A stretch of 64,000 bases of DNA from Gracilinanus agilis (GCF_016433145.1 NC_058135.1:165452582-165516581), one strand, 5' to 3'. Shown: positions 118 through 59,990, counted from the first letter of the stretch. A program made the numbers and translations. Notes: generated by a model not told the origin, from the sequence alone.

Positions 118-144
118 ATGGGCATTTCTGTTTTCACCTTATAA
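118..144 (+). other. uORF1 MGISVFTL*, in frame with the main CDS
   Basis: accATGg (strong Kozak) to TAA at 142-144. Confidence 0.6.
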
Positions 145-146
145 AG

Positions 147-176
147 ATGGCGGTGCGGGATCACTGCAACCTTTAG
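147..176 (+). other. uORF2 MAVRDHCNL*, out of frame
   Basis: aagATGg (strong Kozak) to TAG at 174-176, ending 4 nt before the main ATG. Confidence 0.6.
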
Positions 177-180
177 ACTA

Positions 181-216
181 ATGACTGTCCGAAACATCGC
201 CTCCATCTGTAATATG
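181..216 (+). CDS. USP46: USP46 coding exon 1 ([12 protein letters not shown]), phase 0
   Basis: ATG at 181; donor ATG|gtgagt at 217. Confidence 0.95.
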
Positions 217-3200
217 GTGAGTACTAGCTGGCCTGGAGGTTGGCTGGAAGGAATGAGGAGCCAAAGGAATGAAAGAAAGCCCAGGAAGAACAAACCTCCC
301 TGGGGCCAAGGGCTAGTTGGAGGGTGGGGGCGGGGAGGTGGCCGTCTCCGGGTGAGGTCCAGCGGCTAGAAGGACGAAGAGCTCAAGTGGCCGGAGCGCG
401 GGAGGACCACAAGTAACAACGGTGGGAGAACCTTGCCTTCCCTAGCTCCCCTAGCCCTCCCACCCCGGCAGTCCCCGCAGGGTCCCGCCACTGCTGCCCC
501 CTCCCGTGTTGAGGCTGAGCCCGGCGGGCTCCGAATGGAGGTGGTCTGGGGGTGGGGCCGAACCTTCGGCTGGCGTCTGGGGGAAACCCCAGCTTGTGAC
601 CCCGCCGTGGGAGAATACGCGTCTGGAATCCCGACCCTCCTCCCCACCAACACACTAGGGGACTGCGTCTCTGCAATGCATTTTAAATGCATTGGTCATT
701 AGTGATTATGAAAAAATGCAACAATTTAAAATAAAAATATGCTGCAGCTCTCTCTTGGACTGACTGCCTCTGCGCTCTGGCTGGTGAAAAACCACTTCGG
801 CTCTCGTGGTGCCTCAGTTTTTCCCATCTGGGAAGGGGAAGGGGAGTGCGGATAATGTTATCTGGAAATCCGTGGAATTCGAAGGCCCTCTGGTCCTAGC
901 TGTTAAGTGGACTGCGTAATACCGTTCAGCTGTGGTCCTCCTATTCCTCTAGCTCTTTAGCAAATATGGGGGGAGTTATTGCTAGCCCTAAGGTGGGGTT
1001 TGGGTGCTTGCTAGCAGTCACTTTAATTTGTGCCTCCCTCTCCAGTGTACTCCCATATCCTTTGCAGGTTCTTCAATTTTCCCAAGACTCTAACCCACCT
1101 TATGTGAATCCCAGTGTGCACGTTGTTGGCACTGACACTCCTGCCCTGTGTCTCGCTCAGGAGGATGCCAGCTTGCCCATGGAGTAAGGCAGTCATTCTC
1201 AACCTGGTAGATTCTATTCCCCTCCAGCATTAGGAACCTCTTCTGGGTGTGCCACTATATTTGTTTACTCTCCAATTTCCTATCAGGATTCATTCAGCCT
1301 AGAGTGTCCAGGATGCTGCTGGGAACCATTGCACCATTTCTTTTTAATATCTTTTATTTGTTATATTTTGAAACTCTTTGGGAACTGGTAGAACAGGCTT
1401 CTAGTTGGAATCTGAGGAGGCTTGGACAAAAGTAGCCAAATTAAAAGTGAGACCCGAGTTGGAAACCCTTGGGGTAAGGTGATCAGGCTTCCCCCCACCC
1501 CCACCCCATCCCCTCCCTGCCAGAGTTTTATCTTCTATTTCACACCTGAGATGCCAGATTAACACATGGCCAGGGAGAGTATTAATGAACCCTGCTTTAT
1601 CTCTAGGATGGAACAAGTCTGTTAGACCAGCTTCAGTTTTCATCATTGGTCCACATAGTCTCTGACATTGCCTGCAAAGTATGCACTAGGACTTCACCAA
1701 AGAGAACACAGCAATGGTTACTTGCACATGGAGCGTTCTAACTGGTGTGGGACAATAGGAGCCTTCTTAATTTTCATCTTCTCCACCTGGAGGAGATCAA
1801 CTCTCCTGCCCTTCCATATGTCAGTGCATTCATGCTTAAGGGAGGAAGAAAATGTTACCTACCTACCTATAGTAAAACTGTTATTTCTCTTAGTTTGACT
1901 TTTCATTTTTAATGGTTCATGGTGGATACTGTTTCAGCCTAGACTGGCAACAGCTTCATAGTGAATGGTGGTTATGGGAACAGAAGAGAAATTGGCCTTT
2001 TCACAGGCTATTGTGAAATGTTCTTGTAGTCTTTCTTTTTTAAACCCTTCCTTTCTGTATCATTTCTAAGACAGAAGGGTGTCAAGAACTAGGCAGTTGG
2101 TGTTAAGTGACCTACCCAGGGTCATACAGCGATGAAGTCTCTGAGGTTATATTTGAACCTAGAATCTCCTGATTCTAGGTCTGGTGCTCAATCCACTATG
2201 CTACCTATTCCTCTTGAGGAGGTCACCTCTTGTTTTAGTGTCTTCTTTGCTGCAGAGCTATTTTCCACTGAGCCTCAAAGGCAGTCTGGAAAAGCAAGAA
2301 ACCATAAGAAGAAGCTGCCCTTATGTTTTGGTGGTGACGGTTCAGGATTCCTCCTCCCCTTTATTCATTTTTAAAACCCATACCTAGCTGTAGTACTGCC
2401 TAGCTGCTTCTACCTTTGTTCTTAATGTATGTAGGGGAGGTCATGGGATGTCTTTGGCAGTTGAGAATAGGCTTCATGCTGTTCCCTCTAAAACTTGAGG
2501 CTATTTGTATTGGCCAATGAATGAACAGTTGGGGGTTGCATACTGTGGGCCTATGGAGTAGACAAGGCTGTTGGAGTGTGTGTGCATTTGGTTGGAGAGG
2601 TGGAGTGCCAAAAGCTTACCTGTCCAGATCTTCTTACAGTGAAGAATCAAATTTAATGGTCCTTCTTCAATTAAATAAATAGTGAACCGTAAATATATAA
2701 ATGATGATTGCTCAAACTCCTCTGCTCTAATTCTTCCTATACTGGTTAAGTCATTTGTCTTTTCTTGGCTTTACTTTTCTCTGGTGTAAAATGGAAATTA
2801 TATAGTCTTCAGCCTCTATGGCAACAGTTACAAATGTAAACAATTTTAAGTGTCTAGGGCTTTGCAAAATAGATGCAAATCAAACAAAATAATAATGTAA
2901 ACAGGGAGGTGGAGTGGAAAATCATGACCACTCCCCCTTTTAAAACACATAAATAATTTCAGCCCCTCCCTATCTGACTGAGCCAGAGGAGAATGTTTCC
3001 TGAGTTGAGTTGACTTCTTGGCTGGGATGCTGCTGTTTTCATCTGATCAGACATAATATACTCATTGGACTTCACTGTAGGGTTTGCATTTGCTGATGAA
3101 TTGTTTTCAGGTAGGTCTTTCATGAGTCTCTTCCTCTCTTCATTTTCATGCTGAAATCGGTTTTTAATTAATCCAGATCTTATTTCTTACCAAGGCTCTC

Positions 3201-6200
3201 GTTCAGGTCTACTTTCAGTCTCTGTAACAAATGGGGATAATTGATTGTGAGGTGACATATTTGTAGACGGGCTGGTTTTGGTGCAGGAAAGAAGTAAAAA
3301 GATTTCATCTTTTTCTTGAGATTCAACAAAGCTAAGATCTATATATATTGTGCAGAGGATTTGTTTTCCTGACCAAAATGGGAATAAGCAGAGGAGACAC
3401 AAGAAAATAACATTCAGTATTATTCATGTTTGAGAAATAAACACCTTTTTTTTCTCTACCCTGTACAATTTACCTACACATAAGAAGAAAACCCCAGAAG
3501 TTTTCCCAGTCTATTGGGAAGTTAAAGCTATATCTTATTCATATTAATAATTTTTTTTTTCTCATTTGAACTCTTGCCATAGCACTTCTTGATAAACTTG
3601 CTTCAGGAATGTCATCCTGGCCACAGTGTCTAGTTCAAAGGTAATAAAGCTTGCTTGGCTGGTGTGTTGTAATTTTCAGAATGCATTAGTTACCAAAGAA
3701 TGTTGAAATGTGTATGGCTGGTTAATGAAGCCTTCACTGTATCTTCAGCATAGCCAGAATCCCACATATAGATGAGTTGAGGTTTAAAATATTGACAAAT
3801 GGAAAATGAGAATTTGAGAGCTTTTAAGAAGTAGCTTTTGTTTGGAGAGGTAAAATGCCATTTTAAAATGTGACTTTAATAGACACAAATTGGTTTTAAA
3901 CTATTTTCTCTCGCTTATTGTTGAATTAGTGGTTATATTGTATTTTCTCTAGCCAATAGATATCATGATGTGATGCTTTCTTATTTTTTATAATTAGATA
4001 AAGTTGTTTTAAGAAGATATATATTTACTATCTGGTCAGTCAACATTTTTTCAGCACTTTTCTTAAATTATTACAGTATGTTTCAGAGGCAGCTAGGTGA
4101 TGCAGTGAAGAGAGTACTGGGTCTGGAGTCAGGAAGACTTATCTTCTGGAATTCAAATCTTGCCTACTTATTATAAGTGTCCCTGGACAAGTCACTTCAG
4201 ACTGTTTGCCTCAGTTTCCTCATCAGAAAAAATGACCTGGAGAGGAAATGGCAAACCACTCCAGGATCCTTGCCAAGAAAACCCCAAATGTGGTTGTGAA
4301 GAGTCAGACATAAATGAAACAACTAAACAACAATATAATGTGTTGCATGGTGAAGGGGATGACATAGAATTGAGAGGCAAGAGTCCTTGATTCAGCTTAA
4401 TTCTTCCAGATGTATGAATCTGGTAAAGTTCTTTATGTTTTCATCTCTTATTTTCCTCATATGTAAAATAAGAGTATTGGGTTAGGTGACCCCTAAAATC
4501 CCTTCTTTTCCTAAGAGTTTTTAATGCTTTTTTCTAAATATTAAAAATTTTAGTAATCATTCGAATATATTCTGTTCCCAACTAACTATAAAAAAAGAGG
4601 ACATCGAAATGCCGTATTGAATAACCATTTAGTGAATAGCTAAAACTTGCCGAATTTTTGAAAAATTCCTAAATCTAGATGGCTTCTTTGGAAATTTTTC
4701 ATCCAACTAGAAAAATAAACAACTTCTCTGAGGTCATAGTTGGCAAAAATATTAAAATTCATAATTTTAAGAAAAAGTAAAAAAAAAAGAAAAAAGAAAA
4801 AATAGGTTATTTAGTAGAATTAGTTGTTAGTTATCCATGATAGTCTTGAAATAATTGGAAACTGGGCCTTCTGGTTAACTCTGTGTTCAATTTGCTTTAA
4901 GTCTCTAAAATCAGCCCATGGGGTTTCACCTGTCTAGTTTACTGATTTTAGAAACTGAAACCTGAAAGTGGGTTAAGCAGATGGGAGATGACAGTTCTGA
5001 CATTCATGCCTAAAATATGGGAATGGAAATTGTGTTAAAGGGATGTTGTTTTTTGTTGTGAGGATTATTTAGCTATTAATTTAGTATTAGTGTTGGACCT
5101 AGCAGGAAGGGCTGGAGGATTCCAAGATGGAATGAAGAAGCAGGAAGTGTGCTTCTTGCTCACTGAGAAGGACTCCATGGTGGGAGTTACAGGCAGTAAC
5201 TGATTCCCTGGGAGACCTCAGAGCTTGTGGAGTTGCACCCTGATTCCCTGGGATCCTGGAGTGTGGTGAAGGTTGGAAGCAGAGAGAGACAGGAATGTCA
5301 GATGGACAGGATCAAACAGGATAGGGAGACCAGGGTTTACTGCCAAGGAGCTAACTGTCAACAGGAATGGCAGTTAGGCCCAACAGTCACTCAGCCCACC
5401 TAGGCAAGGGCCTATGGAACCAGCAGGCAACAGGTAAAAGTTTATAACAGTTTAATGTGGGAAACAATAATAAAGGATGGGAATAAGGGATTCTATACTT
5501 ACAAGCTAAGGGCAAGCCAAAGGGTCAGGGGAAGGACTTAACTACACTAAACTAAGACCTAAGCCAGGCAGGGCCCAGAGAATAACAGGACTGGAGTGGG
5601 AATCCTCACAGTAGAGTCCAGAGATGTTTTCAGGATGCCAGGAACCAACTCCTCCAGAACTGATGGTCCAAAGCAGCCCAGTAGGGAGAGGAGCCTGCAA
5701 GCTGTCCACCAGATTGCAGATCACTCCCTACTCAGTACTGTTGTGCAGGATAGATGTCCTCTGCTTCCAACCTTCACCACACTCCAGGATCCCAGGGAAT
5801 CAGGGTGCAACTCCACAAGCTCTGAGGTCTCCCAGGGAATCAGTTACTGCCTGTAACTCCTACCATGGAGTCCTCAGTGAGCAAGAAGCACACTTCCTGC
5901 TTCTTCATTCCATCTTGGAATCCTCCAGCCCTTCCTGCTAGGTCCAACACTAATACTAAATTAGTAGCTAAATAATCCTCACAACACTTTCCTCCCCTTT
6001 TATTTCCTAGGTTCACAAACTCATGATACAAATATATAGATATATTCAACCTTCCTATATTTGGGATTTGGCTAACCAAACTAATGCCCCACTGCTGAAT
6101 GTGTACTGTACGTTTAACTAATACAATAAAGCCTCATTCATTTGAGCTTCCTTCCTCTGACATTTGCATGTACTTGGAAATATTTGTTTATTTTTTAATA

Positions 6201-7660
6201 TTCTATAATTTAAACTTTACTTTTTTCATTCTACCCTTTCTCCTAATCAGACAATATTTTAATTTATTAAAAATATTTTAAATACTTACCTTTATGTCCT
6301 AGTAATAGGTCTTAAAACAGAAGGGCAAGGGCTAGACAATTGGAATTAAGTGGCTCACCAGGATCACACAGCTAGTAAGTGTACAGATTTTAATCCACAT
6401 CCTCCTGACTCCAGGCCTGGTGCTCTATCTATCATGCTACCTAACTACCCCCAGTCAATACTTTTTTTTTGATTGAAAATTTTTATTTAATTAATTGATT
6501 TAGAATATTTTTCCATGGTTACATGATTCATGATGATTCATGTTATTTCTCACCCCCCCCATTAGCCAACAAGCAATTGCCCAGTCAATATTTTTAAAAA
6601 GCTTTGACTATCACATTTGTCTTATGTAATATTATCTTTAAAGGGCTTCATAATTATTATCATTTTCATTTCATAGAAGCAGAAGCAAAATCAAATGACT
6701 AGCTCAAAGTTACTTGAGTAGTGGTAATTATTTGTTGTTGTTCAGTCATTTTAGTCATATTTGACTCTCCATAACCCCATTGGGTTTTTTTTTGTGTGTG
6801 TGTGTGAATGGAATGGTTTGCTATTTCCTTCTCCAGCTCATTTTTGAGATGAAGAAACTGAGGTAAACAGGGTTAAGTGACTTGACCAAGGCCACACAGC
6901 TAGTATCTGAGGTCAGATTTGAACTCAGGAAGGTGAGTCTTCTTGACTCCAGATTCCATGGTCTATCCACTATGCCAAGAGGTAATTATGCACATTTCTC
7001 TATTGCATTCAAGGTTAATAAATGCTTTCCTCTCAAAAACCTATAAGGTAGGTATTGTAAAAACGGCTTTCCAAAGGTCACTCAGTAACCATACTATTTT
7101 CTTCCCAGTTTACCACTGTAGTCACTAATTACATTTCACTCTAATAGTTTTGCAATATTCAAGCCTGTAGTTGTGAGAAAGTGACACATTGGTGGGGTCT
7201 GGGAAAATTCCACAGTGATTCTTAATTGTAAGACCTGAACTATTGAGATAAACTAGGAAAGACTTATTTGAGTGTCTAAAAACAATCTAAGCTGACAAGT
7301 AACTCAGATCAGAATGCTTCATATGGTTCTGGCATTGACGTTGGGATTCTAAATTAGCTGAAGTTTGGAATTATTCATTCAGAGTTTCATGGTGAGTCCA
7401 AGATAGAACCAACTTTTAGTCTGATTGGAGGCAATTGCTTTGGTTGATCTTAAATTTTAAGGGGACCTTTTAAGTTGCTTCTGGTTCAAAATCCTTGAGG
7501 ATACATTCTAGCCGCTAGACTTTCTTTCTACTGTCTCCCAGGATAGTTTAGTCCTTTCTAGTGCTTTGAACATGTAGGCATTTAATAAATACTTGGTGGG
7601 TTGGATTTTAAATGAAATGCTCTCTGATCTCTTCTGGCTAAAAAACATCCAACCTCAGAA

Positions 7661-7693
<33 letters not shown>

Positions 7694-10600
7694 TTGTGTG
7701 TGTGTGTGTGTGTAAAAGTAAAAGGGGAGGTCACAAGGAAGGGACATGACTGTCTTATGATAGGAGCAATAACTGAATGGGAAAAAGAACAAGCTTGTGG
7801 AACTAGAGTAGAGATCTAGGGACAGAAGTTAGAGAATTCCTTGCCAGTCTTTAAATGCAGAAAGTCATTATTATTCAAAACCAGATCTTAATTTAACACA
7901 ATGTTACTAATTTTGGAATGTAACTTTAGTTCAATCAAAAGAAGCATTAGAGAAAAGTATCTTTTCAGCAGCTTAGGAGACATCGAAATTAATGGTTTGT
8001 GGATTCTTCATATTTACTCAAAAGCTTTTAGGTATCCTTTTAGGAAACAAAGTTCAAGTAGTCTTACTTCCACATTTCTCTCTTCAGTTGAGTTTGGTGG
8101 AATGTGACTTATCAGCTCTTGCCTAAACACAGATTTGGGAGGTGTGTTTTGTTTTTAACCTGAACTTTATTGTTCACAATGCTGTGGCATCTTGGAAATG
8201 TGTGTTCTGGCTCTATTGAATTGCAACAGTTACTAGCTTAGTTAATTTGTTTGGTTCCAAGGAGCAGGTTGGACAACTTTGGGTTGATGTTGCAAAGAGG
8301 TAGTAGGCTTAGGTGCCAGGTCCAGAAAACTTTTCTAGTAATTAGTGTTATCCCTAAGTAGAATGGGTGTCTTTGGGGAAGTAGTAGATACCCTCTCCAC
8401 TATCCCCTTCCCAACTGAGATTTTTGAGACATAGCTAGATGACTGCTTGCCAGTGATGTTGTTTTAGTGTGGATTATTAGTCAGGTATGTGTTGGACTAG
8501 ATGACCTCTGAGGTCTCTTCCAATTCTAGATATCTATATAATTTTTAATCAGCAAGACTATAAGCATTTACTTTATAGATTCCAAGCACTGCAAAACACC
8601 AGGAAATACAAAAACAAGGGAAAAGGAAATCACTATTCTCAAGGAGGAAGGACATTATACAAAAGAGAACTGAAAAGTTGGAAGGTAGGAGAGAAGGTGC
8701 CTGTAAACGGTGTCAATTAATGAATGAATCAACAAACATTTATTAAGCTCTTACTATGAGCCAGGCACTGTGCTAAATGCCGGGGATACAAAAAGAGGCA
8801 AAAGAGATGGGTCCTGTCTTCAAGGAACTTACAATCTAAGAGAAGAGACAACATGCAAAAAAGCTATATACAAGGCAAGCTATATCCAGAATAAATGGGA
8901 AATAATTAAAACAGGAAAAGTACTGAAGTTATGGAAAATCTGAAGCAAAACAGAGAAAGGGATTGAAGGTTGGCTAGCCCAGAATTCTTTCCAAAATTCA
9001 GCCCCCTGTGAGGAACTCATTGGTATGAGCAGGGGACCCTGCTAGGGGCTGGGAGATTCCAGCCAGAGGCTTCAGGCTCCAAGAGAAGTTTAAGGGGGAA
9101 GATGGCAGCTGAGGAATGGGGTAAAATCTAGCATGTCAGAAGGGATCTGAGAAAAGAATGAAGGGGATATAGCCTAGGAAATCTGCTACAAAATACAGAA
9201 AGGTTTTTTTTGATCCACAGGATAGTCAGCAGTCATTACCAAGCCCCTACAATATGCTAGACATTTTTAAGTAAAAGGGATTTGGAGAGAAAAATGCAAC
9301 AGCTCCTTCTTTCAAANNNNNNNNNNNNNNNNNNNNNNNNNNNNNNNNNNNNNNNNNNNNNNNNNNNNNNNNNNNNNNNNNNNNNNNNNNNNNNNNNNNN
9401 NNNNNNNNNNNNNNNNNNNNNNNNNNNNNNNNNNNNNNNNNNNNNNNNNNNNNNNNNNNNNNNNNNNNNNNNCAAATATAATGGTGGGCAGCAGGACAGG
9501 GGAAGAAGACCTGGCACTAACATTTGGGAAATCAGAAAAGGCTGTGTTTTATTCCATTGGAAATATTCTCTCTTCAAAGTATGTGTTAAATTCAGAATAA
9601 TTTTCTTAAAGTGAATGAGTTAAACCCAAGGGTAATTCTAAAATTTAAAAACTTGGCTATCAGTTTTGTCTTTCTTCACTCAGCATACCTTTACTACACC
9701 TATGACTAGTCCACAGATTTTAACCTCTTTTCACTTTTGCTTTCCTTCTAGTGGAGGGGCCAGTGGATAAAAAGATGAATACCAGGAGACAGCAAGGGAC
9801 CTTCTAGAGAACAATTCATAAATTGATAATTGGCTCTTCAGATGACCTCATATTGGCTGAAAGAGCAGCTCATCGCTTATGTAATTTGTGTTGGATCATT
9901 CCATTGTTCTTTTCAGGAAGAAAAGCTTGAATCTGAGAAGTAACTCCAAAACATGGCATTCCCACCAAAACACATACATTCATTACACTTTAACAAGACT
10001 AGCAAAGTAGGGAACAAATTTGCCATCATTATTTTAAGCTGTGGTTTACACAGTCACTCAGTGCATAGCAGGGTCAGGAGTGATTAGATTAGGTAGAAGG
10101 AAACCCTGTTGTAATCTGTTCCCTAGAAACAACAGCCACAGCAGAGGTGGTACCAACTTTTCCCAGGCCTCCCTGTGGGGAGAAAAAAAGGGCAAAGAAC
10201 CTTGCTTCTGCCCAGCAGCGGTTTCCTAGCCCCACTTCTTCCAGAATGAATCTCAGATTTCATAATGAGAATGGAATAATAAAGTATATATGCCATGAAC
10301 TTTGTGCTATCTTCAGTTTTTCTAGAACACAATTGTGCTGTCAGAAAGGAAAGGAGGAAAAAAAGGTATGATGGTGATTATTCTTTGGACAAGTCACCTT
10401 CTTGGGTCTCAGTTTCCTCCTTTCTAGAATGAGGAAGTTAAACTAGATCAGGATTTTCTTTTCTTTTCTTTTTTAAAATTTGTTTGCAGTCTGGTGAAGG
10501 CTATGAATTCCTTCTCAGACTAAAGTTTTTAGATGCATAAAACAAAATAAGCCTAATATATTGAAATAAGGAACTTTATTTTCACCCAAGTTCTCATATC

Positions 10601-16600: not shown

Positions 16601-19600
16601 TCTCCCTTCATATAGTGTTGGGTAATCAGTTTCTCTGTGAGGTTTTGAAACCTGTATTACTTCAAAAAATGGGTCATCCAACCCTTGTTTGAAGACTATC
16701 CAAGAAAGAGGAACCCACTATCTCCTATGGCAATCCATTCTGCTTGTGAATACCTCTTAAGTGTCAGGATGTTTTTCTTATAAACAAGCCTATATCTTCC
16801 TCTTTGCACCTTCTCTCCATAAAATTAGTTCTGTTCTTTAAGGCTAAGCAGAATAAGTTCAGTTCCTTTTCTGTGGTACCAATTCTTCAAATATTTGAAG
16901 TATAGTTTTCAAGTCCCTTTAAGACTTTATTCTCTATCATGGACTGGGGGCAAAGAGCAAAATAGCTCCCCCCCCCCCCCCACAACTTACATGCTAATAA
17001 GGTAGCCAGCATCTACATTAAAAAGCATATACAAGATACACAGTGATTATGTGGAAGATTACTTTAGAGGGGAAGGAACTAACAGCTGAGGGTACTGGGA
17101 AAACTCTTCTCTACAGGGTGTTATTCGAGGGGAGTCTTGAACTAAATCAAGGATTTCAAGAGGTAAAGATAAGTAGGGAGAATCTTCTAGACAAAGGTAG
17201 GTAGATAGGTGAGAGGAGGAAGAGCAAAATCATAAAGCTGTGTAGAGGAATAATGTGTAAGAAGAATAGGAAGAGAAGGGGTCACATTGGAGCTTTAAAT
17301 TCCAAGCAGAGGACTTTATATTTTATTTATTTACTTATATTTATATTAATATTTTAATATATTTATATATTTATTTATCATATTTACTTTATATTTGTAG
17401 ATTCTTGAGGTACTAAGAAGCCACTGGCAGTGTTGTCTGTCAAAGACCTGGCACCCATGCAAGCCACACTTGGGAGCTGCTCCCTTTCCCTTTTGCTCAG
17501 AGCCTTAGGACATTTTTTGCATGCCCCACCCATCAGCCTAGCAGCTATAAGCAAGCACTTTCTCTCTCTACTCTCTCTGGTAAAGGGGGAGGGAAATCAC
17601 TGACTGCTTGAACTTACCCTCTGGATACTCAATCTCTAAAGGTTCGCCTGTTGAGGCACTAGGGTTTGTGTAGACCAGATTTGTGTTTTTGAAAAATCAC
17701 TGGTGACTATGAGGAAGATGAATTGGAGTGGGGAGAGACTTGAGGAAAGATTCCCATTAGGAGGCTGTCACAGTTTGTAACTATGCTGGTAGTCACTAAC
17801 CTGTGCATATTCCTCCTCCATACCCTGAAGAGGTTAAAGAGGAAAAGGAATCATATGTACAAGAATATTATAGCAGCTCTTTTTGTAGAAGCAAAAAATG
17901 GGATGCAAAATAGGTACCCATCAACTGGAGAATGGCTGAACAAATTATGGTATATGACCATAATGAAATATTACATCCTTAGAGGTCAGGAAAGGGATAA
18001 TTTAGAGAAACTAGGGAAAACTTGTATGAACCAATGCAGAGTGATAGGAGCAGAACCAGAACAATTTTTACAGTCACTACAATACAGATTAAAATGCTTT
18101 TTGAAAGCCATATGAACTATGGTTAATGTGATGATTGCCCACAATTCCAGAGTATTAATGATGAAACATGCTGCCAATCCCCTGACAGAGAGGCAAAAGA
18201 CTCAGGTGCAGAATGAGACATTTTTTTTTTGGACATGGTCAATGTGAGGATTAGTTTTGCTTGACTGTGCATTGTCATAAGGATTTCTCTTCCTCCATTT
18301 TTAACTTGAGGGGGAGAGAGAGTGGATCTAGCACCTGGTTTGCCAAAGGAAAAGAAATAAAAGAAAAAAGGTAATTGAAGCATTTTCTAAAAAACACCAT
18401 CACCACCAACAGAAGAGAACAGAATGAAGGCCAGAAGGAAATAAAGATAAGCCAGACAACTTTGAATGTTAATGTTGGATTTCTTTTATAGTTAAGAGGA
18501 AAAGCAAACTTTAGAGATTTATAGTTCTGTGCACAATTTTTTTTTTCCTGGTTTGGTGAAAAGGTGATGAGTGCCTCAGCTAGGATAGAGGTTAAATGAG
18601 TAGATGGAGAAGACATAGCTGAGTCAAATTATAGAGAAACATTCTATGCTTTAACTGATTCTTATGTAACATAATCTCAAAGGTCTTTTAGCAAAGTTCT
18701 TAATAAAATCTGGCATCCACACCTAAGCACAATGTTTCAGATAGGGCTTGACTAAGGTAGAGCATAGTAGGTGAATAACCCCCTTATTCTTGGATTCTTT
18801 TAATGACCCCCAAGCTCATATTAACCCTGTACTAATTATTTGAGGGTGAGCCTAATCTCTTACCCCTAGTTGTGCAAGGGCAAATCAAGAAGTCATGGAC
18901 ATTCTTAGCCTGATAATCAAGACCCCCTTGCCTCCTATATAATAAAACAGCTATTCCAATATTTAGTTCCAGTAACCCTGGAGTGCTTCCTGTGTTCTGT
19001 GCTGTCCATTCTCATTGTTCCTTCAATCCAATGCTTAGATATTTGTTTAGGTACTTTCCCACATATAGGAATCAGAGAATGGGGGTTTGAATTTTAATTC
19101 TGACATTTCCTGGATGCTGTTAGACAAGCTGCTTCTCTTTTCTATATATCAGTTTATGCATTGTAATGGGATTAACACAGAACAGATTTTCTTAACTAAA
19201 TGAGCTTTAACGTCCCTTCCAGCTCTAAATCTATGATTCTGAGCTGTCTATCCTTCATGGCCCCAGCTCCAGGTCCCCACCTTCATGAAGCCTCTCTTAC
19301 AGGGAGCTCTTACTCCTCTGACCTTTTAGAATTTTTATTGTGGCTCTCCATGGAGAATGCTTTTATTTTAGACTGAGTTAGCTTTCTGCTTTCTTCTTTT
19401 TCCAATTTTCCAAGTGTAAACACAGATATAGTAAAGATTTGAGTCATCTCCAACTTGAAAACTTTGATTTGTCATTAGTTCTAGTGCTATCTTTAGTTTT
19501 GTTTTATATTTCCTTAAGTAAAGTTGTAGTATTCTTTGGAAATTTTTGAGAAAAAGATGTATATGTTTCCCTTCTAAAAGGTTTTGGAGTCCCTGGGTCC

Positions 19601-22600
19601 CTGGGTCAGAGAGCAGATTATTAGACTTCATATGATCTCTTCTATCTCTATAATCCCTAGGGAATTCTCAGGAAAACCTCAAAGGGAGGGACTGTAGGAT
19701 TGAGCTTCCACCCTACAGTCGCTGTATTCTGATTCACTGACACCAATTATCTGTGTAATCTTGGGCAATTCACTTCCCTCTGTCTCAACTTGTTCTTATG
19801 TTGAACTGACATCCATAAAGTTGCCATGAAGTCTAATTAATTAACAGTTATTATAAATGCTTTAAAAATGTGTGTTTAATGGGTCATCTTCGATTTTCTC
19901 TTTTCTTCTTGTGAACATAAGTAGAAATTAATGCAATCCCCTAGCGATATTCACTTCCTCATTTGCTTTCACTCAGATTCATGCATTGTCCCAGTAACAA
20001 ATTACTTCTTAGTATACCTCATTTTTTAACCCATTGCTCACTGTTCCTTGATTTTCTTTGTTGTTGTTGCTTTCCTGCTCATACTAGGGAGAAGCAGCAT
20101 GGTACCCTGGAAAGGAGATGGCCTGGGAGTCAGGATATAAGGTTTCTAATTCTCCTGTTAACTTCTCTGGGTAACTGTGGACAAATCACTTTGCCTTTCC
20201 AGGCCATGTGGATTTGCACTTGGTTCCAATAGGCCCTTCCAATTCTTTTCAATAGTTTGTCCTATGTTTTTATATGACCTTCTTGAGTTATATGCTCATG
20301 ATCCACTATTCTTCTTGTCTTTCCCATCCTGTACAGTAGCATTCTTCTGTCTCAATTGAGTTTTTGTTTGTTGCAAAGAAGAAAACTTACTAGTATTCTT
20401 TAGTTTGGTTTTGTATTACAAATTGTATCATAATATTCTTTATTTCCCTTTTCCATTTATCTCATCCATTTAGACTTCCTAGTTGCATTGTAGCTTACTC
20501 ACACTGTTTTTAGATTCATTCTGTAAGAGCTAACATTATCAACTCCCCTCTGGGGCTCATTGCTGTTCAGAATATTTTTTGAAAGATTGCCATACTTTTA
20601 CTGGCAGAAATATGAAGCTCAGAATTTTCTCTATCTTTAGATCCTTGATTTTCTCTGTTGAACCATAAAGCAGTCATGCATTGCACTAGTTATGCGTTGA
20701 GTTTCTCCACTAGGATATAGAAGTCAGTCATTATTTGTTAAGAGATTGAGCTAAGAGGAAGAACTAGTAGAGTAGTGTTTCTGAGTCTGAGGAAGGGGAA
20801 GAGTATCCAATAGGAGGGTGGGGGTAGTTAATAGGGTCATAAGCTACAGAAAAGTCAGAGGAAGACTGAAAAGGAGAATGGCCTTTGGCTATTGGGAGGT
20901 CATTAGTGAATTAGAGAAATTTCTATAGAATTATAGGAATGGAAGCTAGGTGGAAAGTGAAGAGGAGAATAAGTAGGGAGCAAATAGGAGTACTGGGCTT
21001 AGGTAAGTCTTTTCTCCCAAATAATTTAATCGTGAAGACGAAGGAGATGAAGGAGATGGTAGTGTGGTTGAGTGGGCTAGATGGACAAAGAAAGATTGTT
21101 TTAAGATTGTTGAAACTTGAATGCTTTTGTAGGCAAAGGGGAAGGAACCAGTGGAGAGTGAGATTTAAAATGTATGAGAAATTTGATATGACTCAGAGCA
21201 AGATTCTAAAGGAGGTAGGAAATGAGAGTCAAAGCTGGATAAAAGAGAGAGTTGGATAGTCCTTACTGAGTCAAGACATTACCCCATGATGTCTTTGGTC
21301 TTCTTTGAAAATGGACAGACAAGAGTAGCTATTTTTAGGGTCAGAGGGAGAAAGAAAAAAGGTTGTAATCTTGATATAATTTGAGCATGGAGAAGATGGC
21401 CTAGTTGATAAGTTTCCCTCTATATACATGAGGGAAACCTGGCAGGTTTACCAGTCTGTAAGCATAGTATTGGCAGTTAGGTGGTACAGTGGATAGAGCT
21501 TTCAGCCTGGAGTCTGATACTTTTTATCTTTATTTATTTATTTATTTATTTATTTTTTAGTTTTAATTTTGAATATTTTCCCATAGTTACATATTTCATG
21601 GTCTTTCCCTCTCCCCAAAACTCCCCTAACCCCCCTTAGCTGATGCATAATTCCACTGGCTTTTACATGTATCATTGATCAAGACCTAATTCCATATTAT
21701 TGATAGTTAGACTGGAGTTATCATTTAGTGTCTACATCCCCAATAATATCCCCATCAGCCCATGTGATCAAACAGTTGTTTTTCTTCTGTGTTTCTGTTC
21801 CCACAGTTCTTCCTCTGAATGTGGCTAGTTTTCTTTCTCATAAGTCCCTCAGCCTTGCTCTGGATTCTTGCATTGCTGTTGGTAGAGAAGTCCGTTATGT
21901 TCGATTGTTCCACAGTGAACTCAGATACTTTTTAGCTGGATGTCCTTGGGCAAGTTGTTTAACCTTGTTTACCTCAGTTTCCTCCTCTGTAAAATTAACA
22001 GGAGAAGGAAAGGGCAAACCATTCCAGTTTCCTTTGCCAGTTATCCCAGTTAGGTTCATAAAGAATCAGATAGGACTGAACAACAACAAATAGCATAATA
22101 TAAATCAGCAGTAAGATGCTGCAACCATTAGGAAGGGCAGAAGGAAGGAAAAAAATGTTTATTAAATTCCTGCTTTGTGGCAGTCATTGTGCTAAGCATT
22201 TTACAAATGTTACCTTGTTTAATTCTCAAAACAACCATAGAAGGGGAGTATGTTCCTCATTCCAGGTTCAGCTAGAATCTCTCCACTGTGCCACCTACCT
22301 GCCATAAAAGTTACTGTGGTCTTACAATGTAATAACATGTGTTTAATGTCCAGACCAAGAGAGATAATAGTTTGATGAAATTCTACCCTGTTAAAAATCA
22401 CAGGGGGCAGCTGGGTAGCTCAGTGGATTGAGAGCCAGGCCTAGAGACAGGAGGTCCTAGGTTCAAACCCGGCCTCAGCCACTTCCCAGCTGTGTGACCC
22501 TGGGCAAGTCACTTGACCCCCATTGCCTACCCTTACCAATCTTCCACCTATAAGCCAATACACAGAAGTTAAGGGTTTAAAAAAATTAAAAAAAAATCAC

Positions 22601-25600
22601 ATCTAAGACATCTGGTCTAATTCTGGGTACCACATTTTCAGAGCATCATTGACCCACACAGGGATGATTTCCTGTCTGCATTTCTTCCAATTTATATGTT
22701 ACATAAATTGGTTTTCTGAACCCAAGGGTAGATCTTGATATTTATCTAAAGAATCTTACTCTTCTTGACTTCAGCATACTGTTTAGCCTGCTAAGCCCAT
22801 TTTTTATGAATCATTTTTCAACCTAACCCAATGAATTATGAAGATCAAATGAGATGATATTTATAACATGCTTAGCACAGTGTTTGGCACATACTTAGGA
22901 GCTATATAAATATTAAGCCGTTGTTGTTGTTAGACCTCCTGGATTATGACAAGATTAGAAATAATGCTGAATATATGTCAGTTGGAAAGAACTGAGGATG
23001 TTTAGTCTGGAGAGGAGAAGACTGAGGAGCATCATGATTTGCTCTTCAAATATTTGTGGAATTGTTCCATGGAAGAGGGTTTAGATAATATTCTTAGTGG
23101 TCCCAGAACACAGGACTAATTGGATAATTACTGGAAACTGGATTTCAGCTTAGTATAAGGAAATGCTTCTTAAGAAATATGCTTATCTCAAAGATGAATG
23201 GAGGCTGGTCCTCTGAGGCTATTTTGAAAGTAACAACTCTTAGTATAATTTTTTTTTTTCCTTTGGAAGAGGATGGGCCAGTAAGAGCAGACAAGAGACA
23301 GGAAGGACAGCTTATTCAAAATTTCAGGCTTCCATGGGGTTTTAGAAGTTATCTAATATTTTCATTTTTTGAATGAGAAAACTGAATCCCAGGGAAGATA
23401 AATAACTTGTTTAATGTTACCCAGGTAACAAATAGCAAAGGTAGGGTTTGTACCCAAGTCCTAGGAACTTTCCTGTAGTGTCAATGGAATTACAAATCTA
23501 GGAACTGAAGGATGAAAATTATAGCCCTTTTCACTGTTAATCTATTTTATTACCCTGATTCTTGGGTATGAGCTCAACTTGGGTATTTACCTCAACTACA
23601 ACTGCTGCCATTGGAGGCTTAGCTCAGGTTCATTCTTTTCAGGAAGAACCATACCCATCAATTGAGGAATGGCTAAACAAGTTGTGGCATATGATTGTGA
23701 CAGAATATTACTGGGCTGTAAGAAATGATGAGCAGGTTAATTTTGGAAAAATGTGGAAAAACCAACATGAAGTTAGGAAGAGTGAAATGAACAGAATCAA
23801 GAGAACATTATATATGGCCACAGAAATATTGTTTGAAGAATGACTCGTGTATGTCCACTTCCAGAAAGAGAACTGATAAATAGAAATAAGACATGATTTT
23901 ATATACACATTTTTAAAAAAAGAACACACGTAGCTCATTTTTTCATTAGGAGCAGGGATTTTCAAATAACATACTTCTTAGGTGATTGAACAAGAGAGTA
24001 ACTGATTTTAGGAAGATTTATTTTTTTATGGTGGGGTTTTTTGGACATTTCTGGAGTTGAGGACATTTCTGTTTCAGGGAGAAATGTTTTGTGAGATCTA
24101 AGTTCTACAGTTTTATGTTAAACGTGTATCCTGCAAAAAAAAAAAACAAAAAAAACAAAAAAAATGAGATTCAGAATCACAGAATGTCAAAGTGGAACCC
24201 ATATCTGGATCATTATCTTATTCAGCCAACATTTATTAAATTTCTATTTTATGCAGAGCTCTGGGGATGCCAGTCCCTAACCTCAAGAAGCTTACATTCT
24301 ACCAGGGGAATACAACATGTACTCAGATAAGCAACTACAAAGTATATACAAAGTAAATATAAAATAATTTCTGAAAGGGGAGGGCAGTAATAACTGGGAC
24401 CATTAGGAAAATCTTCTTATAGGAGGAGTTTAATAGTTGAACCCATGAAGGAAGCTCAAGATTCATACAGGCAGAGAAGTGTGAGTTGGCAGGGGAGGTT
24501 GGTGAGGGGATCCCGTTGTTTTTGTCTGGAGACACATGAGTTTGTTTTTGAATCTGTAAAATCCCAGAGGCCTTGAACATAGCAATGGTAGGTGCTAGAT
24601 ATATATTTTTTAAAATTTGAATTGAGGTTTTTGTTTTTGTTTTTTGACCTTGGTTTTATGCTGATACTGATGCTTATCAAAGCAAATGACCAGCAATTTA
24701 GAGGCTTAGAGAGTTGCTTGGGATGTGAAGTGATTTATTGAGATGTCATAGTTCTATCAGAAGGCAAGATTTGAACCTAGGGCTCCCTGACTCCAAGACC
24801 TTCTCTCTATCCAATCAAGTTGAAATGGATTTATAAGATTGAAATCATGGTAAGTGAACACTCATTTTAGTCTCTTAAGTCGGAGATTCTTAACCTGAGA
24901 TCAAAGCACTTGTTTTTTTTTTAAATATATGCGTTGATAAATTTATTTCAATATAATAACTGGTTTTCTTTTGTAAACCTTTATTTAGTGCATTTAAAAA
25001 CATTCTGAGAAGGGGTGTATAGTTATCACCAGACTGCCAGTGATATCCAAGACACACAAAAAGGTTAAGAATACCTGTTCTAGGGACATGAATTTCTTTT
25101 GATGTATTACAGGGATGTGTCTTAGAAGGAGAAACCAGTAATGTATAGATTCATGCGTTACTAGAGACAATAGATTTAAGCAGCATTGTACTTTACTGCA
25201 TTCCTAAGTGACAGGTAAAGAAATTAGATTACTGGAACAGCAGATAGAATATACAAATTGAGTGGGGAGGAAAAGACAATTTAGATGTGGCTAGAAAATT
25301 CTATCCCTTTGAATTATTTGTTTTATTGGGGATTGGTTTTGCATTTAAACTTTTCCAAGTCTCCAGTCATAGTTGTGCCTATTTTCACCCCATTCATTCA
25401 GCTCTTTAGAAGCTATTTCCCTCTGTTGACAGGAAATGCTAATTGTGTGCAGCAAGAGACAAGCTCAAATGAGATTAAATAAATTTTTATAGTAACTTAA
25501 CATCCAATAACCAAAACAAAGAAGTTTACCGAATAAGTATAATCTCCTAAAAAGTATTTTAATAGTCAGTGAGGTAGAAACAAATAACATTAATGAATGA

Positions 25601-28600
25601 TAAACCAAAAAAAAAAAAGGCTTTTATTCTATATCCTCTTACAGATCTGTGTAAAGTTCCATCGCATTGTGTTGTTTTCTTTCAGGAACAATTCTTTACA
25701 AGATTCAATTCTTGCCTTAAAAAAATACCAATATTATAGGTCTCCGTAAGCTTGAGAGAGCCGAGCCTTTTATGGTACCAAAGTAAGAAGGCAGGCAGGC
25801 TGTCCATAGAATGAGGTCTCAAGGTATGGACATCCTTGGCTGAATGGCAGAGTCTTTCTTTTTTACTGGTCAGTTGCATGCAAAGAGAACTTGGTCCTGT
25901 ACTTAATTTGGAGTCATCCTGACCTTGTTATGTTCACATTGTTGCATAAACTTTGGCTCACTTCTTCTTGTTGCCAATAGGTTCATTGTTGAAGAAGCTT
26001 TACCAAGGTCAGGGAGGAGAATAGTTGTTTTTTATGCCAAAGCGTAGGACTATTTTAGTTGGCTCATCAACTAGTTGCCATTGGGAGTGCCTAGATTCTA
26101 CATGGGGGAAGGGAAGGGAATAAACATTTATTAAGTGCCTGCTATGTGCCAGAAACTGTGTTCTGTGCTTTTACAAATATTACCCTGTTTGATCAAGCTA
26201 GGTAGCACAATGGCTAGAATGCTGGACCTGGACTTAGTCATACTAGAACTCAAAACCAGTCTTAGAAATTCATTAGCTATGTGACCCTGGGCAAGTCACT
26301 TAACCTTTGTCTGCTTCAGTTTTCTCCACTGTAAAATGGGGATGATAATAGCCTTACCTCTCAGAGCTGTTGTGAGGATCAAATGAGATAAGTAAACTTG
26401 TTCTCTTAACTATTAAAACTTTCCTTTATTTTGATGAAAGTTTTAAGTTGGTGGTGTAGTCCATATTCCATTCTGGATGATAGACTTTCACTCTCATATG
26501 AAACCAACATTTTATTCCTTAAGAATTTTTTGGTCATGATTTTTCCATTTTATTGTTTCATACCTCCTCTTTCCTAGAGTTCTCTTAGAGCAGGGGTCGG
26601 CAACCTTTTTGGCCATGAGGGCCATAAATGCCACATTTTTTAAAATGTAATTTCGTGAGAGCCATACAGTGCTCACAGTGCGCGCTCCTGTAACAGTGTG
26701 CACTCCTGTGACAGCACCTGAAAAAAAAATTGACTTTATGGCTCCTGCAGAAAGAGCCATATGTTGCCAACACCTGTCTTAGAGCATAATGGAAGATGTG
26801 GGGGGTGGGAGGAGGGGAGGGAAAGAACATGAATCATGTAGCCATGGGAAAATTCTCTAATTAAATAAACTTAATTAAAAAAAAAGAACATAATGGAAGA
26901 TGAGAAGAAAAGATTGAGGAAAAGAGAAGCATATTGCCAAGATTAAAGTAGGGCAGCTGGATGTAAGGGATGTTCTTAATTTGAATTCCTTCCCATTTTT
27001 GACCCCTTAGCATCCAGCATGAGAGACAGTCATATGAAGACAATAATGTGCCTGCCCATTCTTGCTATCTCTTGTGGTCCAACCAAGCCCCATTACCTGT
27101 AATTCATTTGGGTGACCTCTTTTTCTATACACTACATTCTATAGTAACTTACATTAATATCTGACCAAAGAAAATGTTTCTTTTGGGACTGACTTTTTCA
27201 AGTTTTGTTTTCTCATCTTGTCTATTTTATATTAAACTAAACATATTATTTTTCTTTCTCCAGGGCACCAATGCCTCTGCTCTGGAAAAAGACATTGGTC
27301 CAGAGCAGTTTCCAATCAATGAACACTACTTCGGATTGGTCAATGTGAGTATTATTTTCATTAAATTAAGTAGCCTAGTCTCTTTTCCCATATGGAACCC
27401 CCAATGGCCTTGTTTTCATTGCTTGATTTTCTTTTTTTTACAACCCTTACCCTCTGCCTTAGAATCAATACTTGTGTCTATTCGTTCCAAGACAGAAAAG
27501 CAGTAAGGGATAGGCAATGAGAGTTAAGTGACTTGCTCACACTCTAAGGAGTGTCTTCACTTGCCCGCATAGCTAGGAAGTATCTAAGGCTAGATCTGAA
27601 CCAAGGACCCCTGTCTCTAGGCCTTGCTTTCAAACCATTGAGCTACCCAGCTGTCCCCCATTGCTTGATTTTCAATAATTCCATTCTACTGATTAGAAAG
27701 TGGCAAATTGGAGGTTTAAAGCTGCCTTAAAATATACATTAGCTATTTTACCTGTGCTAGTTCCTCCTTTTTTTGTGGAGCCTTCTTTATAGGATCTCCC
27801 TTACCTATGTATCTTTTAGTAGCTAAGGATAAATTATACTATTCAACAATGAATTTTAATTTATTTTGATGGCCACTCCAGGTAAATCTATGCAGTCAAA
27901 CTTACCTTTTTCCTAAACCATATGGAGAAAAATCTTAGGTTAATGCTAAATTCATTGCATGATTAAATTTAAATCCCACAAATATTTATTAAGTACTATA
28001 TTTTATATACATTAAGAGAAAGATTAAATAAAACATACGTCTCTTTCTAGTTTGTAAGATTATTGAGGGCAAGGACACATAGAGGAATAAATATAATATC
28101 AGATAAAAAAAGATAATTCTGTAAAACAAATACAACCGAGTTATTATGCAAAGGACAGAAAAAGAAATATCATTTCCATCTCAAGGGAGATAAGGCAATA
28201 ATTAGATCAGACTTCAGGGAGAAAGTGACATTTGAACTGAGTCTTCAGAGGTCAGGGGGTTTCTTAACCCAAAGGGAAAGAACATGGAATGCATTCCAGC
28301 TTCTGGTGAAGTAGACAGGAGGAGCCATTCTATGCAAACTTCTGGTCCCATTTCATTTCTGTTTTAGCCCCTTTGAATTTCCCCAGAGCAAAACCCGGTG
28401 CATAACAAGATCTACCAGGCTCTGGTTTCCTGACCAGCTGGCTATGGCCAAGTAATCAAGTAATACAACCCATCTCCCTTACACTTTCCCTTCCTGATCT
28501 GCCTCTCTGGGTAGAGGGCTTAATAGAGCAGAAACACACTCTCAGAAATACCAGGCTGTCTTGTACAGCTGCTCTGGTAGCACACTCTGATGATGTAGCC

Positions 28601-41970: not shown

Positions 41971-42015
<45 letters not shown>

Positions 42016-59949: not shown

Positions 59950-59990
<41 letters not shown>

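What the first reader, a model, noticed from the sequence alone, without database searches (positions are those of the whole stretch)
181..27281. Hidden strong-Kozak Met12 start would expose an ancestral N-myristoylation motif (MGTNAS): possible translation-controlled lipidation switch
Seen: the annotated ATG (181) has weak context (cta ATG a). The in-frame ATG ending exon 1 (214-216) has A at -3 and gains G at +4 only after splicing to exon 2. Initiation there gives MGTNASAL, which fits the NMT consensus MGxxxS (Gly2, Ser6). Known, from memory: plant UBP3/UBP4 and fly/worm USP12/46 homologues begin at this position (MGAxxS-LEK-like), and the plant ones are predicted to be myristoylated. Inference: the vertebrate 11-aa extension masks this motif, and leaky scanning or reinitiation after the uORFs could yield a 355-aa myristoylated, membrane-targeted DUB from the same mRNA. 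The MNCFQ isoform has no Met before Gly and could not make it by initiation.
Basis: partly seen in the sequence, partly recalled or inferred. Interest (0 to 1): 0.75.

Follow-up and report, generated by a model that had tools for sequence, protein, structure and literature searches.

The report
USP46 second start codon, buried lipidation motif
The USP46 gene keeps, 11 codons inside its reading frame, the start codon and fat-attachment (myristoylation) motif with which its insect and plant relatives begin, so a second, lipid-anchored form of this enzyme is plausible in vertebrates but nothing yet shows that it is made.

Summary
The window holds the whole USP46 gene. ATG 181 has a pyrimidine at -3 and A at +4. 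The in-frame ATG 214-216 is the last codon of exon 1, has A at -3, and is joined to GGC of exon 2 (27264), giving M-G-T-N-A-S. The N gap (9317-9472) lies inside intron 1 and touches no coding sequence.

The evolutionary claim holds. Insect, water-flea, nematomorph and plant homologues start exactly at this Met-Gly, and Daphnia has the same intron directly after the ATG.

Three points qualify the reading:
- The 11-residue extension is translated and conserved. It is identical from eel to mammal, and every DNA difference is synonymous.
- Extensions are not only vertebrate. Copepods have a similar one, and many plant models begin M-V-M-G.
- A short upstream reading frame with a TISU-like start (147-176) ends 0-5 nt before, or overlaps, the M-T-V start in all 8 loci checked. 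Hezroni et al. 2017 published this element for USP12/USPL.

No evidence of Met12 initiation or myristoylation turned up in the datasets I could search. The mechanism type is already known (Arabidopsis JASON, human NAA40). Verdict: a sound, untested hypothesis of moderate interest.

The parts
118..144 (+). uORF1, 8 codons (M-G-I-S-V-F-T-L) plus stop TAA, start context acc ATG g
   Evidence: A short ORF ending in TTA TAA at the same place occurs in pigeon, eel, gar and a teleost mRNA contig. Whether it lies in the mRNA of this genome is unknown.
139..155 (+). Most conserved block of the leader (t-t-a-t-a-a-a-g ATG G-C-G-G-T-G). It is a TISU/YY1-like element and matches 10 of 12 positions of SAASATGGCGGC.
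   Evidence: alignment: the 14 bases up to ATGGCG are identical in window, eel and gar, and conservation collapses upstream. Consensus. The TATA-like part is not kept in L006, L007 or USP12.
147..176 (+). uORF2, 9 codons (M-A-V-R-D-H-C-N-L) plus stop TAG, strong context aag ATG g. It ends 4 nt before AUG1.
   Evidence: In 8 of 8 loci (USP46 of mammal, pigeon, eel, gar and two mRNA contigs; USP12 of arowana and Xenopus) an ORF opening at this ATG ends 0-5 nt before, or overlaps (TGATG), the M-T-V ATG. The peptide is not conserved. Published for USP12/USPL.
181..216 (+). Coding part of exon 1: AUG1 (181-183), the 11-residue extension, and AUG12 (214-216) as last codon
   Evidence: Protein identical in 90 of the vertebrate USP46 clusters. 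All variable DNA sites among window, pigeon, eel, gar and L006 are synonymous.
217..27263 (+). Intron 1 (phase 0, directly after the Met12 codon). It contains the assembly gap 9317-9472 and the alternative first exon.
   Evidence: The same intron position occurs in Daphnia pulex, eel, gar and arowana USP12.
3096..3110 (+). Coding part of alternative first exon 1b (M-N-C-F-Q), donor gtaggt at 3111. No Met precedes Gly13.
   Evidence: The same N-terminus appears in bat, pika and lemur models.
27264..27344 (+). Exon 2 (27 codons, G-T-N-A-S-A-L-E-K ... G-L-V-N). The NMT-type motif G-T-N-A-S-A is 27264-27281.
   Evidence: It fits G-{EDRKHPFYW}-x-x-[STAGCN]-{P}.
27277..27308 (+). 10-bp hairpin in the mRNA, its base 13 nt 3' of AUG12
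   Evidence: local ViennaRNA, -18 kcal/mol for 51 nt. Kept in gar. Broken by uncompensated synonymous changes in eel. Absent in USP12 and Daphnia. Probably incidental.
31290..31503 (+). Exon 3 with the catalytic Cys box (F-G-N-T-C-Y-C-N-S)
   Evidence: Used as the query.
36182..62888 (+). Remaining six coding exons (about 36182-36418, 45842-45919, 54806-54892, 57803-58042, 59730-59855, 62784-62888). The borders are approximate.
   Evidence: local tblastn with eel USP46.

Best explanation
ATG 214-216 with GGC of exon 2 is the retained ancestral start codon and N-myristoylation motif of the USP12/46/UBP3/4 deubiquitinase family.

In the vertebrate lineage an upstream in-frame AUG (181) became the main start. 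It adds an 11-residue peptide that is itself under strong purifying selection, so the major product is the 366-residue protein whose Gly13 is internal and cannot be a substrate of N-myristoyltransferase.

Four features make it likely that a minority of ribosomes start at AUG12:
- AUG1 has a conserved non-optimal context.
- AUG1 lies 4 nt after the stop of a conserved short upstream ORF with a TISU-like start.
- No other AUG intervenes between AUG1 and AUG12.
- AUG12 has A at -3 and G at +4.

After methionine removal, that 355-residue form would begin G-T-N-A-S and would be a good N-myristoyltransferase substrate.

Shown here: the anatomy, the ancestry, the conservation of the extension, of the contexts and of the upstream ORF. 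Inferred: initiation at AUG12 and lipidation. Not shown at all: that the choice of start is regulated or matters for function.
For: Anatomy.

Ancestral start: (62 of 120 arthropod-set and 69 of 117 plant proteins begin M-G at this position). One search adds a nematomorph and a streptophyte alga. One search shows Daphnia with ATG|gt and then GGA GCT AAC.

The extension is translated and selected: (identical peptide, only synonymous differences).

Conserved contexts: one search gives C or T at -3 and A at +4 for the M-T-V AUG in all USP46 loci. The codon before the internal Met starts with a purine in nearly all.

Conserved abutting upstream ORF, present in spliced mRNA of two species. [quoted passage not shown]

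The N-terminal 39 residues are dispensable for an active recombinant USP12 complex, as expected of a free regulatory tail.

Precedents for an extension that hides an M-G motif or toggles myristoylation through start choice: JASON; NAA40.
Against: There is no direct evidence of a start at Met12.

USP12 and USP46 do not occur in the supplements of Thinon 2014, Goya Grocin 2019 or Gawron 2016. In Bogaert 2023 they appear only as an interactor hit.

Human USP46 is not in the weakest 10% of start contexts. The same -3 to +5 context at USP12 Met5 scores 100 on that scale, so leakiness may be modest.

Residues 13-39 are conserved throughout the family well beyond what N-myristoyltransferase reads. 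The motif may therefore be kept for another reason.

Plant UBP3/4, which begin M-G, were seen in cytosol and nucleus as YFP fusions. I did not establish which end carried the tag.
Confidence: 0.5

Rival explanations
1. Relic only. Met12-Gly13 is a frozen remnant of the old start. It is kept because the whole N-terminal tail (residues 1-39) is under strong protein-level constraint. AUG12 is used too rarely to matter and no lipidated form exists in vertebrates.
For: Every residue of 1-39 is invariant in jawed-vertebrate USP46, so the invariance of Met12 is not special. The S-x-L-E-K ... F-P-x-x-E-H-Y-F-G part is conserved from plants to animals, beyond the reach of N-myristoyltransferase. USP12 and USP46 are absent from the myristoylome and N-terminomics tables searched. 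The AUG1 context is not extreme on the FACS-seq scale.
Against: Alternative first exons put Q, K, S, E, R, P or W before Gly13, so a Met residue as such is not required there. Yet exon 1a always ends in ATG, although CAG or AAG would fit the donor consensus better. With no intervening AUG and a strong context at AUG12, some initiation is hard to avoid.
Confidence: 0.35
2. Start choice between AUG1 and AUG12 is regulated, by leaky scanning or by reinitiation after the upstream ORFs. It acts as a switch between a soluble and a membrane-anchored deubiquitinase.
For: The stop of uORF2 lies 0-5 nt from AUG1 in all loci. Reinitiating ribosomes therefore have little room to reload before AUG1 and more room (37 nt) before AUG12; that reinitiation rises with distance is from my memory of Kozak 1987. 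The USP12 upstream ORF is heavily translated. Known substrates are membrane receptors such as integrins, LRP6/Arrow and glutamate receptors (titles and abstracts). Copepods, some insects and vertebrates all have paired first exons with and without the Met.
Against: No data show regulation, lipidation or localisation. Plasma-membrane recruitment of USP12 is attributed to WDR20 and to the first four residues, and USP46 is not recruited (plus my memory of the Olazabal-Herrero 2019 abstract). An unmodified N-terminal Gly would be a degron, so the short form could simply be unstable.
Confidence: 0.15
3. The conserved block at 139-155 acts mainly as DNA: a YY1 site, with or without a TATA box, of the core promoter. 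Under this reading the 'upstream ORFs' are by-products with no role in start choice.
For: The block fits the YY1/TISU consensus, which also regulates transcription. The uORF2 peptide is not conserved and its length and frame vary. In JPX, mutating the ATG also lowered transcript levels.
Against: The TATA-like part is lost in L006, L007 and USP12, while the ATG and the stop next to the main AUG persist in three different frames. The block is inside spliced mRNA contigs. Ribosome footprints cover the USP12 upstream ORF, and the JPX ATG represses downstream translation. The two roles are not exclusive.
Confidence: 0.3

Closest known systems
Arabidopsis JASON long and short forms (Cabout et al. 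2017, PMC5853252)
   Same: One mRNA and two in-frame AUGs used by leaky scanning. The N-terminal extension of the long form prevents plasma-membrane localisation. The short form begins with an M-G-C-x-x-S/T/C-like acylation motif.
   Different: In JASON both forms and their localisations were shown experimentally, although myristoylation itself was only proposed. For USP46 nothing beyond sequence is shown. The USP46 motif has no Cys for palmitate. A conserved abutting upstream ORF is an extra feature.
Human NAA40 long and short proteoforms (PMC8037211)
   Same: Alternative translation initiation decides whether the product carries an N-terminal myristate, with different localisation.
   Different: The polarity is reversed. 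In NAA40 the long form is myristoylated and the short one is not.
TISU-associated upstream ORF of USP12, USPL and the JPX lncRNA (Hezroni et al. 2017, PMC5577775)
   Same: It shares the ATGGCGG-type element close to the 5' end and the short non-conserved peptide, and it ends at or overlaps the main AUG. It is translated in USP12 and repressive in JPX reporters. The window's uORF2 (147-176) is the USP46 counterpart.
   Different: The paper states the conservation for USPL and USP12, and USP46 is only named as compared. It does not discuss the second in-frame AUG or lipidation. In USP46 the ORF stops 0-5 nt before AUG1 instead of overlapping the annotated start.
Plant UBP3/UBP4 and insect Usp12-46
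   Same: They are orthologous deubiquitinases with the same tail (G-x-x-x-S-x-L-E-K/R ... F-G-N-T-C-Y) and the same intron after the ATG in Daphnia.
   Different: They start at the Met-Gly, so Gly2 is exposed. I found no experimental proof of their myristoylation in the library. Many plant models add M-V before M-G.
Classical N-myristoyltransferase substrates such as G-alpha subunits (from memory: transducin alpha begins M-G-A-G-A-S-A-E-E-K)
   Same: Gly2, small uncharged residues at 3-5, Ser6, and an acidic/basic E-K a few residues on.
   Different: This is a resemblance recalled from memory, not tested here. USP46 lacks a second membrane signal (no polybasic patch or Cys next to Gly).

Membership tests
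USP12/USP46 deubiquitinases (peptidase C19) | Cys box and full-length collinearity with USP46 orthologues | tested here: met
   (F-G-N-T-C-Y-C-N-S in exon 3); 100% identity over exons 1-3 to vertebrate USP46, with Pfam PF00443 on the hits; nine exons cover residues 1-366 of eel USP46.
N-myristoylated proteins (N-myristoyltransferase substrates) | Sequence motif after the initiator Met: Gly2, no charged, aromatic or Pro residue at 3, small residue (best Ser) at 6, no Pro at 7 | tested here: met
   G-T-N-A-S-A fits. The pattern is permissive, so this alone is weak.
N-myristoylated proteins (N-myristoyltransferase substrates) | Gly is the N-terminal residue of the nascent chain (translation starts at the preceding Met, or proteolysis exposes it) | not testable with these tools
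   This needs ribosome profiling or N-terminomics. No N-terminal peptide was found in the tables searched.
N-myristoylated proteins (N-myristoyltransferase substrates) | Experimentally detected myristate | tested here: inconclusive
   USP12 and USP46 are absent from the supplements of Thinon 2014 and Goya Grocin 2019. These are low-abundance proteins and only the stored text was searched, so absence is weak evidence.
N-terminal proteoform pairs made by leaky scanning | Annotated AUG in a poor context | tested here: inconclusive
   By the -3/+4 rule it is poor (C at -3, A at +4). By FACS-seq values, human USP46 is not in the weakest 10% and the same core context at USP12 Met5 scores 100.
N-terminal proteoform pairs made by leaky scanning | The next AUG is in frame, has a strong context and follows with no intervening AUG | tested here: met
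   AUGs at mRNA positions 181 and 214, with the next at 224 out of frame. The context is t-g-t-a-a-t ATG g-g.
TISU element | Match to SAASATGGCGGC | tested here: met
   Window 143-154 reads A-A-A-G-A-T-G-G-C-G-G-T, 10 of 12 positions (consensus).
TISU element | [quoted passage not shown] | not testable with these tools
   There are no RNA reads for this genome. The contigs L007-L009 begin 13 nt or less upstream of the ATG, which is suggestive only.
TISU element | Its ATG opens the main ORF (true of 64% of TISU genes) | tested here: not met
   Here it opens a 9-codon ORF. This places it in the 36% minority class, as described for USP12.
Regulatory upstream ORF with the stop next to the main start | Short ORF, conserved in position, ending at the main AUG, present in mRNA | tested here: met
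   (8 of 8 loci, 7-12 codons, stop 0-5 nt before or overlapping). (spliced contigs). Translation was not testable here and is reported for USP12.

The most novel reading that the evidence does not exclude
The USP12/46/UBP3/4 family is an ancestrally N-myristoylated deubiquitinase. In vertebrates, and independently or ancestrally in copepods, a conserved extension buries the motif. A TISU-type upstream ORF that ends at AUG1 divides ribosomes between AUG1 and AUG12. Cells could then set the ratio of soluble to lipid-anchored enzyme, and with it the rescue of membrane receptors (glutamate receptors, Notch, LRP6, integrins, T-cell receptor) from degradation.
Probability: 0.15. Interest if true: 0.75.

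Novelty: new member of a known kind. Interest (0 to 1): 0.5.

Why it matters
USP12 and USP46 are soluble enzymes, yet their best-known substrates are membrane receptors. How the complex reaches membranes is only partly explained, by WDR20 and by the N-terminal motif of USP12.

If the family is ancestrally myristoylated, a simple anchor would explain substrate choice in flies and plants. A buried copy in vertebrates would then offer a tunable version.

I found no paper in the searched library that links USP12, USP46, UBP3 or UBP4 to myristoylation. The idea therefore seems unexamined, and it is cheap to test with G2A or G13A mutants and clickable myristate.

If the short form is not made, the result is still useful. 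It would date the extension and the upstream ORF to before the vertebrate genome duplications.

Tried and rejected
The later look-ups used protein ids of other species that an earlier search had returned.

2. TATA-box reading of t-a-t-a-a-a-g (140-146), which would give a leader of only 6-15 nt. Rejected, because the TATA-like letters are lost in L006, L007 and both USP12 loci while the ATGGCG and the abutting stop remain, and because spliced contigs include the block.

3. A start-enhancing hairpin 13 nt after AUG12. It is real in the window and in gar but not conserved in eel, USP12 or Daphnia, so I give it no weight.

5. Supplement searches for USP12 and USP46:
- Thinon 2014, Gawron 2016 and Goya Grocin 2019: none.
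- Bogaert 2023: one interactor row.
- Fijalkowska 2017: no files held.
- Hezroni 2017: none in the stored text.

6. Papers not held: Majeran 2018 (plant myristoylome), Van Damme 2014, Ingolia 2011 and Olazabal-Herrero 2019.

7. Copepod genomic locus: not on record.

8. Homology between the copepod and vertebrate extensions. Both end in C-[TNA]-M|G and share M, L, V and I at similar spacing, but the peptides are too short to decide.

Full report
WHAT IS THERE

The window carries the complete coding region of a mammalian USP46 gene on the + strand. maps nine coding exons from 181 to about 62888.

Exon 1 ends with twelve codons, [12 protein letters not shown] (181-216), followed by the donor gtgagt. 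Exon 2 (27264-27344) starts GGC ACC AAT GCC TCT, which reads G-T-N-A-S. Exon 3 (31290-31503) holds the catalytic Cys box. An alternative first exon inside intron 1 encodes M-N-C-F-Q (3096-3110).

The only run of N (9317-9472) lies in intron 1. It cannot affect the frame or the continuity of the coding sequence, and I did not try to fill it.

THE OBSERVATION

It is correct.
- AUG1 (181) has C at -3 and A at +4.
- AUG12 (214) has A at -3 and G at +4.
- No AUG in any frame lies between them.
- Initiation at AUG12 would give a 355-residue protein that begins M-G-T-N-A-S-A-L. This fits the permissive PROSITE-type pattern for N-myristoyltransferase substrates.

There is one small slip. The base after ATG 214-216 is already G in the genome (the g of the gt donor), so G at +4 is not gained only by splicing.

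ANCESTRY

I searched 1.84 billion representative proteins with exon 3. I followed this with three word-index searches, using a vertebrate protein, a copepod protein and a streptophyte-alga protein as queries. N-termini were classed relative to the Cys box.

| Set | Start at M-G | Internal M-G | No Met before Gly |
|---|---|---|---|
| Arthropod set (120) | 62 | 50 | 8 |
| Plant set (117) | 69 | 43 (34 of them M-[VLI]-M-G) | 4 |
| Vertebrate set (113) | 3 (fragmentary models) | 95 | 14 (other first exons) |

One protein in each of the plant and vertebrate sets showed no Gly motif in the tail.

The arthropod set includes flies, mosquitoes, aphids and water fleas. The plant set includes the Arabidopsis protein that begins M-G-A-A-G-S-K-L-E-K. 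A nematomorph and the alga Chlorokybus also start M-G.

In Daphnia pulex the start ATG is the last three bases of exon 1 and exon 2 begins GGA GCT AAC. This is the same phase-0 intron as in the window. The next intron, after G-L-V-N, is also shared.

Met12-Gly13 is therefore the old start of the family. I could not check nematodes, nor the statement that the plant proteins are predicted to be myristoylated, because the plant myristoylome paper is not held.

THE EXTENSION IS NOT A MERE MASK

The extension [11 protein letters not shown] is identical in mammals, birds, turtles, amphibians, gar, eel and teleosts. Hagfish and a cyclostome-like transcript have close variants. USP12 has M-E-I-L-M-T-V-[SR]-K-[FI]-A-S-I-C-T-M.

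Among window, pigeon, eel, gar and a teleost mRNA, all four variable DNA sites in these codons are synonymous. The peptide is therefore translated and selected.

Copepods carry M-S-[DE]-L-R-R-V-I-G-D-R-L-I-P-C-[TA]-M before the Gly. They also have a second first exon ending in K. Extensions and paired first exons are thus not a vertebrate novelty. Whether the copepod and vertebrate extensions are homologous cannot be decided from 16 residues.

The N-terminal motif of USP12 is reported as needed for shuttling to the plasma membrane. The first 39 residues are dispensable for an active recombinant complex.

THE 5' LEADER

Upstream of AUG1 lie two short ORFs (118-144 and 147-176). Aligning the leader with eel and gar shows one sharply conserved block, t-t-a-t-a-a-a-g ATG G-C-G (139-152). 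Conservation collapses upstream of it.

I compared eight loci: USP46 of the window, pigeon, eel, gar and two spliced mRNA contigs, and USP12 of arowana and Xenopus. In all of them, an ORF of 7-12 codons opens at an ATGGCG/ATGGCT in a strong context. It ends 0-5 nt before the M-T-V AUG or overlaps it as TGATG. It does so in three different frames and with an unconserved peptide.

Two spliced contigs from other vertebrates contain the ORF, so there it is in mature mRNA. A TATA-box reading of the block fails, because the TATA letters are not kept where the ATG and the stop are.

The block matches 10 of 12 positions of the TISU element, which is also a YY1 site. Hezroni et al. 2017 already described this element for USP12, the lost paralogue USPL and the JPX lncRNA. 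In their account it is a conserved TISU-associated upstream ORF that overlaps the main AUG. [quoted passage not shown] The window shows the USP46 counterpart, which is an extension of a published finding rather than a new one.

HOW IT MOST LIKELY WORKS

Shown:
- The old start and motif persist.
- AUG1 has a conserved non-optimal context.
- AUG12 is the next AUG and has a strong context.
- A strongly initiating short ORF ends next to AUG1.

Inferred:
- Ribosomes reach the coding sequence by leaking past the uORF2 AUG or by reinitiating after it.
- AUG1 takes most of them, because the extension is selected.
- A minority go on to AUG12.
- The resulting G-T-N-A-S N-terminus would be myristoylated, or degraded as a Gly degron if it is not.

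On quantity, the classical -3/+4 rule calls AUG1 weak. On the FACS-seq scale, however, human USP46 is not in the weakest 10%, and the same core context at USP12 Met5 scores 100. The annotated USP12 AUG scores 63 and is in the weak set.

I put the odds at about 60% that some Met12 form is made. Given that it is made, I put the odds at about 70% that it is myristoylated. I put the odds at about 15% that this is a regulated, functional switch.

AGAINST

No table I could search lists USP12 or USP46 as myristoylated or as having a second N-terminus. These are weak negatives for low-abundance proteins.

Residues 13-39 are conserved far beyond what N-myristoyltransferase reads, so the motif may persist for other reasons.

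COMPARISON WITH WHAT IS KNOWN

The mechanism type is known.
- Arabidopsis JASON makes a long form and a short form by leaky scanning. The extension prevents plasma-membrane localisation of a short form that begins with an M-G-C-x-x-S-like motif.
- Human NAA40 toggles myristoylation by start choice.

If true, USP46 would be a new member of that kind, with a TISU-type abutting upstream ORF as an added layer. I found no paper that links this deubiquitinase family to myristoylation.

VERDICT

The finding is of moderate interest and easy to test.

Noticed in passing
window 139-176; L001 1464-1495; L003 1463-1500; L006 248-291; L007 14-40; L013 537-596; L005 1487-1513; L014 575-613: A TISU/YY1-like ATGGCG opens a 7-12 codon upstream ORF. 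Its stop lies 0-5 nt before, or overlaps (TGATG), the M-T-V start in USP46 and USP12 from fish to mammal. This was published for USP12/USPL/JPX (PMC5577775); the USP46 copy and the strict stop-start adjacency are shown here.
   Followed up: yes
window 27277-27308: A perfect 10-bp hairpin in exon 2 starts 13 nt after AUG12, a spacing said to favour start recognition (Kozak 1990, from memory). It is kept in gar, broken in eel, and absent in USP12 and Daphnia.
   Followed up: yes
proteins P0279-P0330 (copepod-type), L010 188-240: Copepod USP12/46 has a conserved 16-residue extension ending I-P-C-[TA]-M before the Gly, a weak first AUG (t-t-c ATG t), and a second first exon ending in K. This parallels the vertebrate layout.
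   Followed up: partly
proteins P0399-P0517: 34 of 117 plant UBP3/4 models begin M-[VLI]-M-G, with an extra in-frame AUG two codons before the M-G start. This is either an annotation habit or a second case of tandem starts around the motif.
   Followed up: no
window 39800-41900: About 2.1 kb in an intron has strong G-over-C (0.27-0.58) and A-over-T skew, and tandem repeats do not explain it. It could be a sense-strand LINE fragment.
   Followed up: partly
window 5054-5986: Another first-stage note (s1-154169) reports a 230-bp fold-back of LTR-like sequence in intron 1. I did not examine it, and it has no bearing on this finding.
   Followed up: no
protein P0001: A 252-residue colugo (Galeopterus) model is identical to the window over exons 1-3 but contains the Cys-box stretch twice (two matched stretches). 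It looks like a mis-assembled or mis-predicted gene model.
   Followed up: no
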